Source: Fimbriosthenelais zetlandica (Eukaryota). From it: DNA of 64,000 nucleotides. Positions 1 to 9,774 of the stretch are shown piece by piece (position 1 is the first letter of the stretch; the number at the start of each line of letters is the position of its first letter). The position numbers were made by a program, and so were the translations under genes. The stretch covers positions 19,406,001 through 19,470,000 of the forward strand of contig OZ365114.1 in NCBI GenBank assembly GCA_977030845.1. The letters are read 5' to 3'. A model generated the notes under the pieces. The model searched no databases, was not told the DNA's origin, and saw only the letters and a list, made by a program, of their open reading frames with translations.

Positions 1-291
1 TGTTGTCAAGAATGACTCACTTGTCTGCTAGGCCTAAAATTAAATTATTAATAATTTTTAGTACGGTAATATGTTACAGTAGGCCCCCCTAATAATTATG
101 AGTAGGACTACGGTAAGTCTCTGACCTGTAGTAGGCTGTACGATACCTGTAAATGTTTAATACTAAATAATAGACCTGGTTTGTCTTCATGATTATCAAA
201 ATGCCTTCATTACTTATAGGGCCATCCTAAAATAGGGGTTTAATATATTATACAGCGTATATATTAAATTTATTGCTTTTCTGTCTTTCAG

Positions 292-3200
292 TATTGGCTG
301 CATCATCCATCGCCAATATCGTTAAGAGCAGCCTTGGGCCTGTTGGTCTTGATAAAATGTTGGTTGATGACGTTGGGGTAAATACATTAATTCCTAGATC
401 AATAATGCTAGAGAAGTAAAGAGAGTGAGACATTCAGATTCTGTCGTTGACATGGTCATCGGCTACATTTAATATAATCAGTGACTGAACTAGAGTCTAA
501 TTCTAGAGTATTTTGATCTTCATTTTCACAGGAGGTCACAATAACAAACGATGGTGCCACTATCCTGCAATGTTTAGAAGTCGATCATCCAGCTGCAAAA
601 GTTTTAGTTGAACTTGCCCAACTCCAAGATCAGGAAGTAGGAGACGGAACCACATCAGTTGTAAGTGTTTATATTTAGAAGTACATGTAGACAGAATCGA
701 CAGTAGAATCGAAATAGTTTTCATTAATCTACTCCCATTCAACTTGCTCTCATTGCCTCCTATGTTTTGAAGAGTATATACAATGGGACAAAGAAAATAG
801 AATCAAGTACTTCAAAAGAAGGTCCATGTTAATTAACTGGGTCATTGATACTTAATTCAACAGACTACTGTACTTTAAATACTTAAGATATTTTAGTTCG
901 TCTCCCAATTTTTTGTATATCGCGAAATTGTTTAATTAATTGTTTACCAATTTAATTAATAGAAATGTAACTTTTAATAATATCTTTTTTTCAGGTGATC
1001 ATCGCAGCCGAACTGTTGAAGAATGCTGACGATCTTGTGAAATGCAGAATTCACCCCACCTCAATAATCAGTGGTTTCAGACTGGCCTGCAAGTAAGTTC
1101 AATACATGTAGTTAGCATCCACTTGTATTTAATAACTAATATAAGAGCTTGTTGCACTGTCTTTGAAGTCTCTAGCCTTGGTAAATTATCCAAATTACCA
1201 TCAGAATACGTTATTAAGAACTAAATGTCTAAATCTAATAGAAAATATAATGATGAAATTGCGTTTTTCAGGGAGGCGTGTAAATACATCCAGGAGCATA
1301 TGACCATCAACACTGATGAGCTTGGCCGGGAATGTATCATCAATGCTGCCAGAACCAGCATGGCCAGCAAAATTATTGGACCGTATTCTTTTAAACCAAT
1401 ATAATTTAAAACCCCCTGAAAATTAATATCCCATTCAACTTGCTCACACATACTTCTCATGTAGTGATGGGTATATAATTTGGGAAAAAGCAAAGGAATT
1501 AGTCTTTTTGATCCGTTGTCCTTGTGTCTTGGGTCTCTGCTACTGATATTCTACAGAAGAAATCCTCTAAATTCTTGAAATAGATATTCCCCTTCAACTT
1601 GCTCACACATACTTCTCCTGTAGTGAAGAGTATATAGAGTGGGAAAAAGCAAAGGTATTCCAGTCTCTTTGATCCGTTTTGTTTGCATATTGGGTCTCTG
1701 CTACTGATATTCTACAATTATATTTTTCATTTGGAAAATATGATTTCACGATGTGTTAATTTGTTTTATAAGCCTTAACTGAAGCTCAGAGATTCGGAGT
1801 TCTTCTCTAACATGGTGGTTGACGCTGCTATGGCCGTGAAAACTTCTGATGGGAAGGGAGGACATAAATACCCCATCAAGGCTGTCAATGTTCTCAAAGC
1901 TCATGGTCGCAGCTCCAAGGAGAGCGTCTTAGTCCAGGGTTATGCTCTCAACTGTACAGTGGCTTCACAATGTGAGTAACTTACTAAGCTCAGAATGCCA
2001 TTATTTTATTTGGGGTAATATTCAAGTGAATTACATCCTTTATAATATAGCTTTCAATGAATTTGACCTAAGTAAATGATTTCAAAAATTAAATGATACA
2101 ATTTTTGTTGAACAGTGATGGTGAAAAGCATCCAGAACCCCAAGATCGCCTGTCTCGACTTCTCCCTACAGAAAACCAAGATGAAGATGGGCGTGCAGCT
2201 TCTTATTGAGGACCCGACAAAGCTAGATAAAATGAGAGACCGGTAAGTTTATAAACTTAGGGATCGAATACACTTGTTCATATTGAACAGGATATATATG
2301 GAACTATCTTGCCTTTTTAATGCAAAATTTGCTGAAATTGATATTTTCCCTCCTTTATAATGCTTCTCTATATGTAAAGGAGAAGTGCATTGATATATCC
2401 CCAGGAACATGACCTGCCATGGTAATTAATTACATCTCTCTCTTTATCAGTGAATCTGACATTACCAAAGAGCGCATCCAGAAGATCCTGGCTACAGGAG
2501 CTAACGTTATCCTCACTACAGGAGGTATTGATGACTTGTGTCTCAAATACTTCATAGAGGCCGGAGCCATGGCTGTGAGAAGGTGCAAGAAACAAGATCT
2601 GAAACGCATCGCTAAGGCTACTGGAGGTAGGAAATTATTTTATTAATCATGTAAATTTATTCATTATGCATAGATTTTTGCAAAAGGTAAATTGCCCATA
2701 CTGTACTTGTTTTGTGTTTTAGTTAATTGTTTGTTTTCTCAACTTGCAGGTCAGTTAGTCGTATCTCTGGCTAACCTCGAGGGGGAAGAAACTTTTGAAG
2801 CATCCATGCTGGGATCCGCCGACGAAGTTGCCCAGGAGAGAATATGTGATGATGAACTCATTCTTGTCAAGGGGTGTGTAATTCTTTTATATTTCTGAAT
2901 ATTTTAGGCCTTGATATAATTATAGTTAAATGAATTAACGATGGTATTATAATTGGGATCATTTCACTCTATATAAATTGATTTTTTGTTTTAAATAAAT
3001 GTTTTAAAGTAAATATTTCGTTTGTTTTTTAGAACCAAGGCCCGCACTGCTGCTTCTATCATCCTGCGTGGAGCTAATGACTACATGGTGGATGAGATGG
3101 AACGCTCTGTGCATGACGCCCTCTGTGTTGTTAAACGTGTACTAGAGTCCAAGTCTGTGGTACCAGGCGGTGGAGCTGTGGAGGCAGCCCTCTCTATCTA

Positions 3201-4648
3201 CCTAGAGAACTTTGCTACATCTTTGGTGAGTTTCTAGAATAATAACTTAAACATAAAAATCCCCATGATTTTGCTGCACTCATTTTAACAGTAGTGAGGC
3301 CAGTTATACGCGTGGGGGACAACAAAACCATGGTGGGCAGAAAATTTCCAACAAAAATAAATTTGTTGTGAATTTTCTCCTGCTTGGGACATGGTCAAAC
3401 CTTTATTAAGGTGTCATATGGTCTTAAGGAATTATTTTCTAGTGATCTTGGATAGATTAGGGAATGTTTAAATTTATTAAAAAAGAAAAAGATTTTCTTT
3501 ATCCCCATGATTTTGCTGCACTCATTTTAACAGTAGTGAGGCCAGTTATACGCGTGGGGGACAACAAAACCATGGTAGGCAGAAAATTTCCAACAAAAAT
3601 AAATTTGTTGTTAATTTTCTCCTGCTTGGGACATATTAATAATCGTCCGACCTTTATTGAGGTGTAATATTGATGTATCATTTTCTAGTGATCTTGGATA
3701 GAGAATGGAATATTTAAATTTATTAAAAAAGACAAAAGATTCTCTTTTATCCCCATGATTTTGCTGCACTCATTTTAACAATAGTGAGGCCAGTTATACG
3801 CGTGGGGGACAATAAAATCATGATGGAAAAATTAACTCCCAACAAAATTTTTGTTGTGAAATCTTTCCAGCTTGGGACACGCAATCATCCAACTTTCAGT
3901 TTGTCTTTCCAGATTACCTGATAAGCTAACTATTTTATCTTTAGTATGAGAACTAATGTTACAATAATTGTCACGATATGTAACAATTATTTGGTTTTAC
4001 CAGAATGTATAATTTATAATAAATTTATTTTTTACCAGAGTTCTCGTGAGCAGCTGGCCATTGCAGAGTTTGCTAGATCTCTTCTAGTCATTCCTAAACA
4101 ACTGGCCGTGAACGCTGCCCAGGACTCGACCGACCTGGTGGCTAAACTCCGAGCTTACCACAACACATCACAGACCAAAGCTGAACACCGAGATCTCAAA
4201 TGGTACGTTTATAGTACTTTAAAATACTAAAATACTTTAAACTTTAGTACAGTAAGAAATGAACTCCTTATCACTCGACATGGAACAGAATGAATTATTT
4301 ATTACCTTCTAGCATGTATATTAGACTACTGTATATTATAATATGTATTTATTAATAGAGCTTAGTGAGCATTGAAGTCTTGTCTTATCAGTAACCTGGA
4401 TCAAAGGTGAAGATAAATGTTTTTTTTTTCCTTCCTCCGCCAGGGTGGGTCTGGACCTGTATGAAGGCGTGGTGAGAGACAATAAGAAAGCCGGCGTGTT
4501 TGAACCAGCTATATCAAAGATCAAGAGTCTCAAGTTCGCCACCGAGGCAGCCATTACTATCCTCCGTATTGACGATCTTATTAAACTTACACCTGAACAA
4601 AAAGAGGGCAGTGCATATGCTGAGGCCATGAGACGTGGCGAACTCTAG
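292..4648 (+). CDS. TCP1: T-complex protein 1 subunit alpha (CCT1), 5'-partial. Exons 292-377, 532-660, 995-1092, 1272-1382, 1790-1971, 2116-2242, 2451-2626, 2750-2873, 3033-3225, 4039-4202, 4444-4648; first coding exon lies upstream of the window
   Basis: Spliced translation gives [38 protein letters not shown]...[12 protein letters not shown]...[13 protein letters not shown]...[16 protein letters not shown], the CCT-alpha signatures. All junctions are GT-AG and the frame is continuous to TAG at 4646-4648. Confidence 0.98.
733..865 (+). ncRNA. Box H/ACA snoRNA candidate, family A copy 1 (TCP1 intron 661-994)
   Basis: Hairpin (cccattCAACTTgctc...gagtATATACaatggg), H box AAAGAA at 790-795 14 nt after the upper stem, second hairpin (gaatcaagta/tacttaattc), ACA at 860-862 plus 3 nt. 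The 5' hairpin is homologous to copies at 1429 and 1588. Confidence 0.8.
1429..1558 (+). ncRNA. Box H/ACA snoRNA candidate, family A copy 2 (TCP1 intron 1383-1789)
   Basis: Hairpin, H box AAAGCA at 1487-1492, hairpin, ACA at 1553-1555; tandem near-duplicate of 1588-1719. Confidence 0.82.
1588..1719 (+). ncRNA. Box H/ACA snoRNA candidate, family A copy 3
   Basis: Hairpin, H box AAAGCA at 1646-1651, hairpin, ACA at 1714-1716; same CAACTT/ATATA pocket. Confidence 0.82.
3260..3394 (+). ncRNA. SNORA20: Box H/ACA snoRNA, SNORA20-like, family B copy 1 (TCP1 intron 3226-4038)
   Basis: ccccat-GATTTT-gctg...cagt-TATACGC-gtgggg, H box ACAACA at 3319-3324 14 nt after the upper stem, second hairpin, ACA at 3389-3391. 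The pocket pairs with the conserved 18S segment GCGUAUA-UU-AAAGUU. Vertebrate SNORA20 is also hosted in TCP1. Confidence 0.85.
3502..3636 (+). ncRNA. SNORA20: SNORA20-like H/ACA snoRNA, family B copy 2
   Basis: Near-identical tandem copy of 3260-3394; ACA at 3631-3633. Confidence 0.85.
3750..3882 (+). ncRNA. SNORA20: SNORA20-like H/ACA snoRNA, family B copy 3 (3' hairpin diverged)
   Basis: 5' hairpin nearly identical with an unchanged pocket, H box ACAATA, diverged 3' hairpin, ACA at 3877-3879. Confidence 0.8.
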
Positions 4649-7600
4649 ATAGCTCTAATTTATATAAATCATTCAATGTGTCATGAGACGAGGGTTCTGG
4701 GGTATTATCTAATAGTATCTGCTCCTCTATAATTTATAATGGGGATATGCAGGTAAAGTGCGTGAATTCAGTGGTAAAGCCAAAAATTGTGTCTCCAGTA
4801 ATCTTTCCCTTACGAATGCATCCAATGGGAATATCTTTTTCCAAATTCTGTGTCAAATGTGGACAGATTTTGTACTTACATGTTCACAAGTAAATGGGGA
4901 ACTTTGTATGTGAAATTTACTTGATGGTATCGTATCTAATAAGGCGGAAATAAGATCTCGGAAACACATTTTTCATGGCATATTATGAGGGTGTGGATTA
5001 GTAGCAGCCTTCTCTAGCCAGGTAATCGCAACCTGCCTTACACAGGCCAGCGATGGAAGGCTATACTATGAAGAAAGACGAGCTGATGTTGCTTATATAC
5101 GTCCTGTTTGTTTCTGCTTTGTGTTACAAGAAAAATGGCAACAAAATCATTATCAATAAACATTTTCTACTCACCTATGAAGTCGTATTTAAAGAAAATT
5201 AATATGGAACATGATTTTAAATAGTAGAATGTCTTGGGCATCTCGAGGCGAGCACCCGTGAGCATCTACTGTTGCCGCAGCTGAGGCGATGTTTAATGCA
5301 CGCCCCAGTTGGGGTAACGGTAAATAACACTAGGTGGTCAGTACTTAGCTTTAAGCTAGTAGGACCGACGTAGCAGCTGGTCAGCGAGCTGGTCTTAACC
5401 GGAAAGACTGAAAAATAATTCATTCTTCCAATTCCTATGCTATTTGGGTGTTCAAAGTTGCACTTCTATTAATACGTCACTAACTTAGGTACTAGGCCTA
5501 TACAGAAACTCTTGAGTGTATTGATAGATCAGAGAAACAATGTATACCACTCCCTGGCTTCGTCAGCATTTCATTTGGCCTTCCTTGATCTTGATAGGAA
5601 GAAGCCATTTCCTTCCATTTAAATTGGGGATCTTCCCGTTCATAAAAAAAACTCCCCCGGCCACAGAGAAAATGAAACTAAATTTTGAAATAAGGTCGGT
5701 AGACATGTTCAGGCCTGAAAATTTGCAACGTCATTGAACAATGAGATTGGATTTTCATTTAATGTTCACTATATTTGGATACAGCCCTGTGAACAATTTT
5801 GCACGTTTATTCCTGTCTTGGTCTAACAGGGACACAATCTACTACCTGTAACATGTCGGGCGTCATTATAGGTGTTGCTTTTGAACCTCACAGGTTTTAC
5901 CGTTGATAGGCCTGGCCTCTTCTATAACTACAAGGACAGGTATACAACGGTAAGACCTGCACAGATTACTGCTTCCCGTCTCTGTTGATTATCTTCAACA
6001 ATCCTTCTATTAAGCAGACGCCTCATATCTCCTATAGTATTTAAACCGGCGTTAAAATAAATGTGCTTTTGTACAAATGTACATGACATTGATGAAGATA
6101 AAATGAATCAAACCGACTCATCGGTAAACTTATGTTCTGAGTAAAGAGATATCGTCCTATTCCACTGAGCATGTCCCATGGTTTTACCGAGGAACTCATT
6201 CTAGGGAAATTCCTACATCATCCTCCTTTTCCTGAACTTGAGTCCCTATAATAATCCATGATATATATAGAGAGCTATTGATTGCCAAAAACAGACGGTT
6301 CCGGGACCAGGAAGTCTGAAAATAACTTTTGAACAAATGTAACATTACTCAACAATTACAATTAGTTCGAGTTAGAGAAGATCCAAAAGGCAATATGTCG
6401 GTAATATGATAATCTATTTGAGGGTAAACGTTTCAGTTTACAATAGAAGATCGTTTAGAGATCATGTGCAATCTTAGTGTGGGGTGTGGGTGGGTTCGGA
6501 AGGGTGACAGAATTAAAAATGTTACTGATCTGGGTTCCCTCAATAGTGATGCATTCATAGCCAATCTTTAATCAGCTGATATTAACTATTAGTTTGACTG
6601 GTTTGTTGACATATAACTTCCCATGCGTGAAACTGTTTCACTTCCCCATTCACTGATGCTACACCTATTTCCGGAAAAGTTCACTCTATGATTTTCCCCA
6701 TAAATATCACACTGAAATAATAGACTTATAAATAGTTAAATCTATGCTAATGAATGAATACTACATTGTATTTCCAATTTAGCTTGAGGCCCACCTCCAA
6801 ATGGAATGCCTTCGCCCATTTTATCTTAGTCGCCTGCACTGTGTTATCTCCTGACCACTGACTCAGACACTTATACCGACTTTATAACGTTCATGTAATG
6901 TTACTTTCACTTTCCTTTCCAAACTTTTATATTTAGTGACATCTATTATACGAATCTACAATAGACAACTACATACAACTACATAGAGTACTTACTGTAC
7001 ACTGAAAACGTTTGCATTTTGTCCTCTTCTACATTTACATAAAAAGAAAAAAGTGACCTTTTAATTAAGCTGAAAAACCGTAGTCAGTGTACAGTAATCT
7101 ACCGATACCTAGACATTTTGATAAAACATACGTTTGATCTTAACCCACTTACCTTGCATATACAATGTACTTACTGTGTATTCCATATCTAGAGTGACCA
7201 TGGTTATTTAGAAAGCTTCATTCAAGATCTTTCTCTCTCCTACAACCGTTTACAACTCCCATTATACTTCATTCAGGCACACTCGTGGGGTAGAGATTGT
7301 TTCAATACAAACTGGGACTTTCCCCACACCCCCACAAACTGACTTGATAGAGGTGGGAGTTAGAAACTCGCCGGAATGAATGAACGATCCAACAGGAATG
7401 CTTCACGTAAGACGCGTCATTTACTTCTGACTCACATTCATATCGTAAAGGAAAGTTTGCGGTTGAGTGAACATTTTGCTGAATGGTCAATATTTAATGG
7501 CATTTTTCGCGTAGGCAATAATTTGTAGGCCAAAAAAGTGTTCATGCTCTGAATCTCAAGAACCCGGTAGCTATTTTTGTTAACGAAATATGGGATTTAT

Positions 7601-9774
7601 GTGGTCAAGACAATATAGAAATATCACTTGGTATATATTCACATGGATGCAAATACGTTGGCGGAAAGGTATTTTTTTTTTAACTTAGAAGTGCATTTTC
7701 TATCCATTAATTTTACCATTAAAATGTTTAATCATAGTGATTAAACTTATCCTGAGTCGTGATGTGTTATAAAATGATCTAAGCTAAAGATTTTAAAAAT
7801 CATTAACATCTTTTCATTGAATTATATACGAGACCCATGTGATGGCTCAGCTCAATAAATCAGTGTTTATACTCCTGACAATATATCACAAGTTACGGTA
7901 TACGAAAGATTATGGTTATATTTTATCCTTTAAGATTATTGATTTTTCCTAATGTACAATATTAATATAAGATAACAACCGTCTACCGCCAATTTAATTT
8001 GATCAATACATAGTTTTATTTTAAATAAATTAAATTTTAACATTTAAAAGCCATGAAAATGACTCATTCTAGATAGCTCATTTTTTCATAGAGATGGTCC
8101 CCAAAATTTTCCTGGATTATTTTATATTTAAAAAAATCCTAATGGATTATTTCAAATATAAACAGTACACGTTTAAACCAACTATGTAGCCTATATTTAT
8201 ATTCGAAGTCATAATATTCCTACCTAACCAGATGAAATAACTTAAATATTATGTACTTCGATATTATTATACCATGAAAGCATTATCTGGTACCTGCTCC
8301 TTTGATACGAACAGATAAGCAATTAATGTCGGAGGACTTGAGGTACGTGCCTGACCCCGATATACTGTGCCAGGTTGGATCATACATGTTTGCCTTAATG
8401 AAATTATTGAGAGAAAAAGGCCATATATGTAGTTTAAATTTCAGCAAGAGGAAAGTTTAAGGTTTATGGACGCCATACACGAAGGTGATATAGCCATCAA
8501 AATAATTACATGTATGTCTGGGAGACATTACGATGATCACAGAAACTATTTGTATGCCTACATAATTACAATAATTGTATGTAGAACTTTCTACATTTAG
8601 ATGACATGAGATATAGCCAACGAAACTGAATTTATAATATTTCACTCGCCTAAAACTAATTTGAAGTACCGATATTAATTTAGGATGATTTGTTTGAGAC
8701 AGAAGCTTAATCTACAAAAATTGTTTTAAGAATTCTTACCTTGACAAGTTGTTCCTTGTCTGGTGTCCTCTCTTCATGTGAACATACTGTGTCCTTGTAC
8801 CTCGCTTATACCACTGTGCTGATACAATCAATAATTAAAACTCTATACATCATCAATGTAGAAAGTAAAGATAAGTGCCCTGTGATATTTCTTTTAGACT
8901 TTTTTTCAATAGAATGTAGATAAGCACTAGTACGTTCCTAATGGACGACACCATATATTATGTATCCATTGATAGCCTGTAAAGTAGGATACATTATGGG
9001 CAATAGGTATAAGCCTAATTATCAAATAAATTGCATATAATATAGTCCTAGAATTAGGCCAATGTTGAGCTCTGTAAAAGTAAAGACAAATTTACTTTTA
9101 AAAAAAAATGTGAAAATCATTTTCACCAGATATATTGCTGACAATGGACTATCTAGACCTTATATGAAATCATGGGATTATTGACAAGTAAGCTTATGTT
9201 AGCATGCAGGCTTATCTTGTCTAATCTGGGATGATCTCAGACAGGTTCATTAATGATAATTAATAATATAGGCCTATCCTCCTAATTGACATTTGTTAAA
9301 ATAAAAAGGCCTATAGCCTACGTACTCTACACGTTTCGATGTACCGGTAGGCTATCGATCTAAATTCTTTTTTATTCCAAGTAATGAAATTTGAAATTTG
9401 GGCAAATTCATGATATATTTTTTTAATTAGATAGGCTATATATTAATCACAACAATACTCACCTGACATTCACTACATGGGCGGCTTTCGTTGCCCATAT
9501 GTATGGAGGCCCTATGTCTTTTCTCTTACAGGATCTTATGGTCTCTGACCAATACTGATTATGGGTATAAAATAGGCTACCAAGAGATAAGACCACCTCT
9601 GAACACCACTCCCCAACGCCCACACGTATGTGTAGGCTTTCTTTTTTAGCAGTCCCCCTTCTAGGCATAGCCTAGCAAGGCTATAATACTCGTCAGCTTT
9701 CTGTTTAGGCCTATAATTATAGTGTCGATCAAAGTCCGTAAAAAACGGTTGATATGTCATGTTGTCTGTTCATA

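What the first reader, a model, noticed from the sequence alone, without database searches (positions are those of the whole stretch)
733..1719. H/ACA snoRNA family whose guide pocket is shifted one base from SNORA20 (predicted new 18S pseudouridine site)
Seen: three copies (733, 1429, 1588) share cccattCAACTTgctc...g[ag]gtATATA, each with an ANANNA H box exactly 14 nt after the upper stem and a terminal ACA. The 5' hairpin resembles the SNORA20-like family in the same gene. Knowledge: the conserved 18S segment is GCGUAUAUUAAAGUUG, and SNORA20 guides Psi651 (human numbering). Inference: CAACUU pairs A654-G659 and AUAUA(C) pairs (G646)U647-U651, leaving U652-A653 unpaired, so the predicted target is U652 rather than U651. 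This looks like a duplicated guide retargeted to the adjacent uridine and then amplified. It might correspond to the other vertebrate TCP1-hosted snoRNA, SNORA29, usually listed as an orphan; that link is unverified.
Basis: partly seen in the sequence, partly recalled or inferred. Interest (0 to 1): 0.75.

Follow-up and report, generated by a model that had tools for sequence, protein, structure and literature searches.

The report
Conserved snoRNA aimed beside SNORA20's site
Three introns-encoded copies of a box H/ACA guide RNA in the TCP1 gene of this invertebrate are real, are kept with an unchanged guide in at least three other distant invertebrates, and should convert the 18S rRNA uridine next to the one served by SNORA20 into pseudouridine; the kind of molecule is ordinary, the predicted site is not on record.

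Summary
Copies A (732-865), B (1429-1558) and C (1588-1719) lie in sense inside introns 3 and 5 of TCP1. Each folds as hairpin, H box, hairpin, ACA. They are the only copies in the 447-Mb genome.

The 5' pocket (CAACUU / AUAUAC) pairs 6+6 (A) or 5+6 (B, C) with this species' own 18S. That leaves U623-A624 unpaired, which is human U652. It is the single outstanding match in 6 kb of rRNA. The SNORA20-like copies at 3259-3865 pair 7+6 one base upstream (U622, human 651).

New evidence: TCP1 contigs of three other invertebrates, with saturated synonymous sites, carry 2-8 copies each. In 17 distinct sequences CAACUU never varies and AUAUAC varies only in B and C. The upper stem covaries (8 of 11 pairs), and the H box is always 14 nt from it. 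One species' SNORA20-like RNA has arms CAACUUU / UAUACG, exactly one register away, which supports paralogy.

The SNORA29 idea fails: its Rfam model finds nothing, and SNORA29 guides 28S-45 and 18S-220. Expression and the pseudouridine itself could not be tested because no sequencing runs were listed. The scan had not noted this family on other DNA.

The parts
732..865 (+). Copy A, the best-formed copy, in TCP1 intron 3 (661-994). P1 733-739 / 782-788 (7 bp); 5' arm CAACUU 740-745; P2 746-775; 3' arm AUAUAC 776-781; H box AAAGAA 790-795; 3' hairpin 800-858; ACA 860-862.
   Evidence: 6+6 Watson-Crick pairs with 18S around U623. Covariance model R1 scores it 82 bits.
1429..1558 (+). Copy B, first of two in TCP1 intron 5 (1383-1789). 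5' arm CAACUU 1436-1441; 3' arm AUAUA(A) 1473-1478; H box AAAGCA 1487-1492; ACA 1553-1555. P1 is only 5 bp.
   Evidence: 5+6 pairs with 18S around U623.
1588..1719 (+). Copy C, 160 nt after B and 87% identical to it. It ends 70 nt before the 3' splice site. 5' arm CAACUU 1595-1600; 3' arm AUAUA(G) 1632-1637; H box AAAGCA 1646-1651; ACA 1714-1716.
   Evidence: 5+6 pairs with 18S around U623.
3259..3394 (+). SNORA20-like copy 1 in TCP1 intron 10 (3226-4039). Arms GAUUUU 3267-3272 and UAUACGC 3305-3311. Predicted target is 18S U622 (human 651). It serves as the comparison paralogue.
   Evidence: Rfam RF00401, 47.9 bits, below the gathering score of 60. 7+6 pairs at U622.
3501..3636 (+). SNORA20-like copy 2, tandem to copy 1.
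   Evidence: RF00401, 48.4 bits. One of only three SNORA20 matches in the genome.
3749..3865 (+). SNORA20-like copy 3, with a more diverged 3' hairpin.
   Evidence: RF00401, 40.4 bits.
292..4650 (+). Host gene: exons 2 to last of TCP1 (CCT alpha). Exon bounds checked: E3 532-660, E4 995-1092, E5 1272-1382, E6 1790-1971, E10 3033-3225.
   Evidence: The exon at 3034-3225 matches T-complex protein 1 subunit alpha, residues 367-430, E 1.5e-32. Splice sites read.

Best explanation
A, B and C are genes for a box H/ACA small nucleolar RNA of about 130 nt. They would be released from spliced TCP1 introns and packaged with the dyskerin complex.

The 5' pocket binds pre-18S rRNA. The 3' arm AUAUA(C) pairs with (G617)U618-U622. 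The 5' arm CAACUU pairs with A625-G630. That leaves U623-A624 at the base of the upper stem, 15 nt from the H box, so U623 (human U652) would be isomerised to pseudouridine.

The neighbouring U622 (human 651) is served by the SNORA20 orthologues in intron 10 of the same gene, so this ribosome would carry a pseudouridine doublet there. The family is an old paralogue of SNORA20 in which both guide arms moved by one register: one U fewer in the 5' arm and one A more in the 3' arm.

The 3' hairpin supplies the ACA domain needed for stability but has no conserved guide.

Shown here: the anatomy, uniqueness in the genome, complementarity to this species' own 18S, and conservation and covariation across species.

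Inferred: expression, RNP assembly and the modification itself.
For: Architecture and boxes:
-.

Host gene:
- Sense orientation inside TCP1 introns.

Target:
- Own 18S taken from the assembly.
- The pocket scan gives U623 a score of 27 (6+6 Watson-Crick). The next best site anywhere in 18S, 5.8S or 28S scores 12.
- 0 of 3000 shuffled arms and 3 of 3000 random arms reach that score.
- Register table: the new family gives 6+6 or 5+6 at U623 and 0+2 at U622. SNORA20-like gives 7+6 at U622 and 0+3 at U623.

Other species:
- TCP1 contigs of three other invertebrates carry 3, 2 and 6-8 copies.
- Third codon positions of the flanking exon are only 38-44% identical to the window, so the species are anciently diverged.
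- In 17 distinct sequences CAACUU agrees in 102 of 102 cells and AUAUAC in 100 of 102. Upper-stem columns agree in 192 of 260.
- The upper stem has 8 of 11 pairs changed on both sides and is 93.8% paired. 0 of 500 shuffles reach the covariation score. Slid controls collapse.
- The H box starts 14 nt after the upper stem in all four species.

Paralogy:
- The Rfam SNORA20 consensus and the window copies have the 3' arm UAUACGC after the same G-U closing pair.
- The SNORA20-like RNA in L016 reads CAACUUU|GCUG...CAGU|UAUACG.
- Chicken ACA20 in TCP1 intron 9 guides the 651 equivalent (PMC2653536).
Against: - No RNA evidence exists: no sequencing run could be listed.
- No pseudouridine map exists for this or any carrier species. 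I found no paper reporting pseudouridine at this position.
- The 3' arm is five or six A-U/U-A pairs and is weak on its own (-0.5 to -2.7 kcal/mol).
- In the free RNA the last U of the 5' arm can pair with the first A of the 3' arm, and this must open for the target.
- Copies B and C have lost the sixth pair and have a weaker lower stem.
- The cross-species copies were found with a model built from the window copies, which favours hits that keep the arms. Two weaker relatives with other arms exist in L020.
- Five other TCP1 contigs, including the one with the most similar exon, show no copy within 6-10 kb.
Confidence: 0.75

Rival explanations
1. The family is a redundant back-up guide for the SNORA20 site (U622, human 651). 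It would use a pocket in which the U-A pair at the base of the upper stem stays closed or three target bases stay unpaired.
For: The minimum-energy fold of copy A keeps that U-A pair. In that form the 3' arm UAUAC pairs 5 bp in the U622 register. The two binding sites overlap almost fully.
Against: In the U622 register the 5' arm makes only 1 pair. The canonical U623 register gives 11-12 pairs. Both arms are shifted in the same direction relative to the homologous G-U closing pair of SNORA20. A back-up guide would have no reason to keep a shifted register unchanged across four species.
Confidence: 0.07
2. The RNAs are made and bind this 18S segment, or another RNA, without modifying it. They would act as a folding chaperone or a competitor that times SNORA20 action, or they would guide a non-rRNA target that was not scanned.
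For: Conservation of the arms shows selection for pairing, not for catalysis. snRNAs and mRNAs were not scanned. The two guides cannot bind at the same time.
Against: The geometry is that of a modifying pocket: two unpaired target bases starting with U, and 14 nt to the H box in every species. A 12-of-12 match to a universally conserved rRNA segment is hard to better elsewhere. No CAB-type UGAG loop motif is visible in the apical loops (read).
Confidence: 0.1
3. The three window copies are decaying, non-functional duplicates of a snoRNA. Their complementarity to 18S would be left over from SNORA20 ancestry.
For: Folding z-scores are unremarkable. B and C have weakened lower stems and a mutated sixth guide base. 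The 3' pockets differ between A and B/C and have no convincing target.
Against: Relics would not keep 12 guide bases, both boxes and the 14-nt spacing across species with saturated synonymous sites while the stems change by compensatory pairs. Leftover SNORA20 complementarity would sit in the U622 register, not in a perfect U623 register.
Confidence: 0.05

Closest known systems
SNORA20 / ACA20 (Rfam RF00401), guide for human 18S pseudouridine 651, hosted in TCP1
   Same: Both are box H/ACA RNAs with the same host gene and a 5' hairpin that acts as the guide. The upper stem closes with the same G-U pair (GCU...AGU). The target segment GCGUAUAUUAAAGUUG overlaps. This genome also keeps true SNORA20-like copies in TCP1 intron 10. 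Chicken ACA20 is in TCP1 intron 9 (PMC2653536).
   Different: Both arms are one register off: CAACUU / AUAUAC against (C)AACUUU or GAUUUU / UAUACG(C). This puts U652 rather than U651 in the pocket. The Rfam model scores only 18 bits on copy A and nothing on B or C, against a gathering score of 60. The copies sit in different introns (3 and 5). The 3' hairpins are unrelated in detail.
Xenopus pug18S-137 and pug18S-324 (SNORA16-like and SNORA58-like guides; 'target switch by point mutations', Deryusheva, Talhouarne and Gall, PMC6984369)
   Same: The evolutionary process is the same. An extra copy of a conserved H/ACA snoRNA in the same host gene acquires a new rRNA target through small changes in the antisense elements.
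   Different: Those switches move to distant sites and are frog-restricted. Here the move is by one nucleotide, and both paralogues are retained in distantly related invertebrates.
SNORA29 / ACA29 (Rfam RF00429), the other vertebrate TCP1-hosted H/ACA snoRNA
   Same: It is hosted in an early TCP1 intron: intron 4 in human (PMC4824147) and intron 1 in the chicken annotation.
   Different: No similarity is detectable. There is no RF00429 match in the gene, and the best genome-wide hit is E 5 on another chromosome. Its guides are for 28S-45 and 18S-220, not for the 652 region.
SNORA46 / ACA46, guide for human 18S pseudouridine 649 (chicken 18S-610, host CNOT1; PMC2653536)
   Same: It targets the same short 18S segment, two bases further upstream.
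   Different: It has a different host gene. No Rfam match to that family was found here. The arms here give 0+0 pairs at the 649 equivalent, U620.

Membership tests
box H/ACA snoRNA (class) | Hairpin-hinge-hairpin-tail fold of about 120-140 nt | tested here: met
   All three copies fold this way, as do orthologues in L016, L020 and L022/23.
box H/ACA snoRNA (class) | H box ANANNA in the hinge and ACA directly after the 3' hairpin | tested here: met
   AAAGAA 790-795; AAAGCA 1487-1492 and 1646-1651; ACA 860-862, 1553-1555 and 1714-1716. That ACA lies 3 nt from the real 3' end cannot be checked without RNA data.
box H/ACA snoRNA (class) | Pocket base 14-16 nt upstream of the H or ACA box | tested here: met
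   5' hairpin: 14 nt between the upper stem and the H box in all copies and in all four species. 3' hairpin: 16 nt (A) and 17 nt (B, C), which is borderline.
box H/ACA snoRNA (class) | Bipartite antisense element of at least 8 bp flanking an unpaired U-N in rRNA or snRNA | tested here: met
   6+6 (A) and 5+6 (B, C) around 18S U623-A624 of this species. The 8-bp minimum is the working criterion quoted in PMC6984369.
box H/ACA snoRNA (class) | Stable RNA bound by dyskerin, Nop10, Nhp2 and Gar1 | not testable with these tools
   No sequencing run was listed for this organism.
SNORA20 (RF00401) | Covariance-model score at or above the gathering score of 60 bits | tested here: not met
   18.2 bits, E 5, for copy A. 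No match for B or C.
SNORA20 (RF00401) | 5' pocket places the human U651 equivalent in the pocket (3' arm UAUACGC) | tested here: not met
   0+2 pairs at U622 against 6+6 at U623.
SNORA20 (RF00401) | Hosted in a TCP1 intron | tested here: met
   The copies are in introns 3 and 5, whereas the SNORA20-like copies are in intron 10.
SNORA29 (RF00429) | Covariance-model match | tested here: not met
   No match in window 1-8000 at E up to 10. The best genome-wide match is 26 bits, E 5.2, on another contig.
SNORA29 (RF00429) | Pockets for 28S-45 (H domain) and 18S-220 (ACA domain) | tested here: inconclusive
   The 5' pocket's only strong site is 18S U623. The 3' pockets have no strong site. The only hit near that 18S region is a 4+4 chance-level one at U215. 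I did not map the exact equivalents of 28S-45 and 18S-220 in this species.

The most novel reading that the evidence does not exclude
A group of invertebrates carries an extra pseudouridine at the 18S position equivalent to human U652, directly next to the widely conserved pseudouridine 651. It would be installed by an old SNORA20 paralogue whose two guide arms each slid by one nucleotide. Both paralogues have been kept in the same host gene (TCP1) ever since, which would make this a clean natural example of guide retargeting by a register shift.
Probability: 0.65. Interest if true: 0.5.

Novelty: new member of a known kind. Interest (0 to 1): 0.45.

Why it matters
If the modification is confirmed, it adds a site to the map of eukaryotic rRNA pseudouridines. 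The site lies in a universally conserved 18S segment between the 530-loop helix and the central domain.

It would also show how a guide RNA gains a neighbouring target through a coordinated one-base shift of both antisense arms while the parent guide is retained. Carrier and non-carrier species exist, so there is a natural presence/absence test.

In practice it supplies a covariance model and a conserved signature for annotating a family that Rfam 15 lacks. Other agents have reported further lineage-specific snoRNAs in this same genome. This is therefore one more case of an under-annotated invertebrate snoRNA set, not an isolated oddity.

Tried and rejected
- Rfam at gathering thresholds on the whole window found nothing. 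Only permissive E-value scans revealed the SNORA20-like copies.
- Two searches for public sequencing runs listed none. Read laying was therefore never usable and expression is untested.
- A scan of metagenome contigs with an exact pattern for the 5' hairpin gave no match. The route that worked was an exon-level protein search followed by contig look-ups.
- 3' hairpin targets: no convincing site for A, B or C. Copy B gives 4+6 at 18S U637 (human U666), but only if the pocket is offset by one base. Copy C does not share it, so I rejected it as a conserved function.
- The 3' pockets also differ between species.
- Plain sequence similarity between the family and the window's SNORA20-like copies is weak. 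Shuffles reached the observed score in 33 of 2000 (C), 506 of 2000 (B) and 1274 of 2000 (A). The paralogy argument therefore rests on host gene, architecture and arm registers.
- Literature searches for Psi652 / 18S-652, for Drosophila Psi18S-640 and for SNORA20 with 651 found nothing usable.
- Supplements of PMC6984369 are not held.
- No copies were found in L015/L026, L019, L021, L024 or L025, even with filters off. L027 holds only a weak relative with a different 3' arm.
- snRNAs were not scanned as alternative targets.
- The organism was not identified.

Full report
**What is in the window**

Bases 292-4650 of the + strand hold exons 2 to last of a TCP1 (CCT alpha) gene. The exon at 3034-3225 matches T-complex protein 1 subunit alpha residues 367-430 with E 1.5e-32. 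The splice sites can be read directly.

The three elements of the finding lie in sense inside introns:
- Copy A (732-865) is in intron 3.
- Copies B (1429-1558) and C (1588-1719) are in intron 5, 160 nt apart and 87% identical.

**Checking the observation**

- a lower stem beginning CCCAUU or CCCCUU;
- a 5' arm CAACUU;
- an upper stem that opens GCUC and closes G[AG]GU;
- a 3' arm AUAUA followed by C (A), A (B) or G (C);
- an ANANNA box (AAAGAA or AAAGCA) that starts exactly 14 nt after the upper stem;
- a second hairpin;
- ACA directly after it.

All three fold as hairpin-hinge-hairpin-tail. The folding energies alone are unremarkable (z -0.7 to -1.3).

The three are the only copies in the 447-Mb assembly, by BLAST and by a covariance model of the 5' domain, R1. 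They are therefore not a dispersed repeat.

**Relation to Rfam families**

No Rfam family reaches its gathering score anywhere in the window. A permissive scan finds SNORA20 (RF00401) three times in tandem in intron 10, at 3259-3394, 3501-3636 and 3749-3865 (48, 48 and 40 bits). These are the only SNORA20 matches in the genome.

On the new copies the SNORA20 model gives only 18 bits (E 5) for A and nothing for B or C. The SNORA29 model gives nothing in the gene and a chance-level best hit elsewhere.

**The target**

I took this species' own rDNA from the assembly: 18S is L007:1698-3600, 5.8S is 4106-4259 and 28S is 4633-8591. The motif GCGUAUAUUAAAGUUG sits at 18S 615-630.

A scan of all rRNA uridines for bipartite pairing gave these results:
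- The pocket CAACUU / AUAUAC has one outstanding site, U623, with 6+6 Watson-Crick pairs (score 27).
- The runner-up anywhere scores 12.
- B and C give 5+6 at the same site.

None of 3000 shuffled-arm pockets and 3 of 3000 random pockets reach the observed score.

The same scan puts the SNORA20-like pocket (GAUUUU / UAUACGC) on U622 with 7+6 pairs. That is the human 651 equivalent, as expected for SNORA20. Chicken ACA20, in TCP1 intron 9, guides the equivalent chicken site 18S-612, and ACA46 guides the site two bases upstream (PMC2653536).

The register table is clean:

| Guide | At U622 | At U623 |
|---|---|---|
| New family | 0+2 | 6+6 or 5+6 |
| SNORA20-like | 7+6 | 0+3 |

The one structural caveat is that in the free RNA the last U of the 5' arm can pair with the first A of the 3' arm. 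In that closed form the 3' arm fits the U622 register, but the 5' arm then makes a single pair.

**Evidence from other species**

This is new here and is the strongest part of the case. No relatives of this genome are offered and no sequencing runs were listed. I therefore searched the protein collection with the 60-residue exon 6, which lies 70 nt downstream of copy C. It returned exon-sized open frames from long eukaryotic contigs in public metagenome assemblies, 73-90% identical. I fetched the DNA around ten of them.

Model R1 finds the element on the gene's strand in TCP1 introns of three further organisms:
- L016/L017 has three copies.
- L020 has two.
- L022 and L023, two contigs of one sample, have six to eight each.
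- A plain pattern search agrees.

Third codon positions of exon 6 are only 38-44% identical between the window and these loci, so the species are anciently separated.

Across 17 distinct sequences:
- CAACUU never varies (102 of 102 cells).
- AUAUAC varies only in the window's B and C (100 of 102).
- The paired columns of the upper stem agree with the majority in only 192 of 260 cells (Fisher p about 1e-16).

The upper stem keeps pairing through change. Eight of 11 pairs have changes on both sides, 93.8% of cells are paired, 0 of 500 shuffles reach the covariation score, and sliding the partners by one to three columns destroys the signal. The H box begins 14 nt after the upper stem in all four species.

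One bias must be stated. The model was built from the window copies, so copies with altered arms score lower. Two such weak relatives exist in L020 (2538 and 5063, arms UUAUUAU / AUAUGCG).

Five other TCP1 contigs (L015/L026, L019, L021, L024, L025) show no copy within 6-10 kb, even with filters off. L027 holds only a weak relative with a different 3' arm. The family is therefore not universal.

**Relation to SNORA20**

Plain similarity between the two families in the window is weak. However, L016 also carries a SNORA20-like RNA downstream in the same gene (35.5 bits). Its pocket reads CAACUUU|GCUG ... CAGU|UAUACG.

Against the same G-U closing pair, the new family reads CAACUU|GCU ... AGU|AUAUAC. 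That is one U fewer on the 5' side and one A more on the 3' side, which moves the unpaired dinucleotide from U651-U652 to U652-A653. Together with the shared host gene, this makes descent from a SNORA20 duplicate the most economical account. The duplication must predate the split of the four species.

**The 3' hairpin**

Its pocket differs between A and B/C and between species, and no rRNA site stands out. Copy B gives 4+6 at 18S U637, but only with an offset pocket, and C does not share it. I take the 3' domain to be structural, providing the ACA box and the second protein-binding hairpin, or else an orphan.

**SNORA29**

- No model match exists.
- SNORA29 is no longer an orphan. It guides 28S-45 and 18S-220 in amphibians, reptiles, birds and mouse, and is simply not processed in human (PMC6984369; PMC4824147).

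**Known or new**

The kind of molecule and the way it evolves are well known. Xenopus SNORA16-like and SNORA58-like guides arose the same way, by a 'target switch by point mutations' (PMC6984369).

What is not on record, as far as I could search, is a guide for this position or a pseudouridine at it. Rfam 15 has no matching family, and text searches for the site returned nothing. Those searches are limited, and databases such as snoDB could not be consulted.

Other agents of this scan reported further lineage-specific snoRNAs in this same genome. That fits an under-annotated invertebrate snoRNA set.

**Verdict**

This is a real, conserved H/ACA snoRNA family and a new member of a known kind. 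Its predicted target is well supported: 18S U623 (human U652), adjacent to the SNORA20 site. Expression and the modification remain to be shown.

Noticed in passing
window 3259-3394, 3501-3636, 3749-3865: Three tandem SNORA20-like H/ACA copies (period about 245 nt) in TCP1 intron 10, all below the Rfam gathering score (48, 48, 40 bits). Their 3' hairpins fold as almost closed stems with no open pocket.
   Followed up: partly
L007 9349-9467; L008 380-498 and 2521-2639 (G000 contig C41): Three 5S rRNA genes lie in the intergenic spacer of the 18S-5.8S-28S repeat (unit about 20.5 kb), on the same strand as the large rRNAs. The 5S and 45S arrays are therefore linked in this genome.
   Followed up: no
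L020 10200-12860: In another species' TCP1 locus, a tandem array of about 26 units of roughly 100 nt weakly resembles the 5' hairpin of the family (CAAACUGCUC...GGGCAUAUAAGAGGGGAUAUAG; R1 12-16 bits). It may be a satellite derived from a single snoRNA hairpin.
   Followed up: no
L020 2538-2601 and 5063-5126: Two relatives of the 5' hairpin have different arms (UUAUUAU / AUAUGCG). The 3' arm still fits the 18S segment in the U652 register, but the 5' arm does not. They may be degenerate or retargeted copies.
   Followed up: partly
L027 9446-9511: A weak relative (20 bits) just downstream of exon 6 in a further species has 5' arm CCAACUU but 3' arm ACUUAC, which does not fit the 18S site.
   Followed up: no
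window 1497-1552 (3' hairpin of copy B): The pocket CUUUUU / (U)CUGCU gives 4+6 pairs with 18S around U637 (human U666), 14 nt downstream of the 5' pocket's site. This works only with a one-base offset and is not shared by copy C.
   Followed up: yes
window 5890-5961: A 70-nt near-perfect inverted repeat downstream of TCP1 gives weak matches to miRNA precursor models on both strands (mir-5592, mir-2068; about 21 bits). It looks like a hairpin-forming repeat rather than a curated family.
   Followed up: no
L019 1081-1149, 7410-7478, 7908-7976, 8528-8596: Palindromic 68-nt repeats in another species' TCP1 introns match the mir-9457 model on both strands (37-50 bits, below the gathering score of 90). 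The pattern resembles a miniature inverted-repeat element.
   Followed up: no
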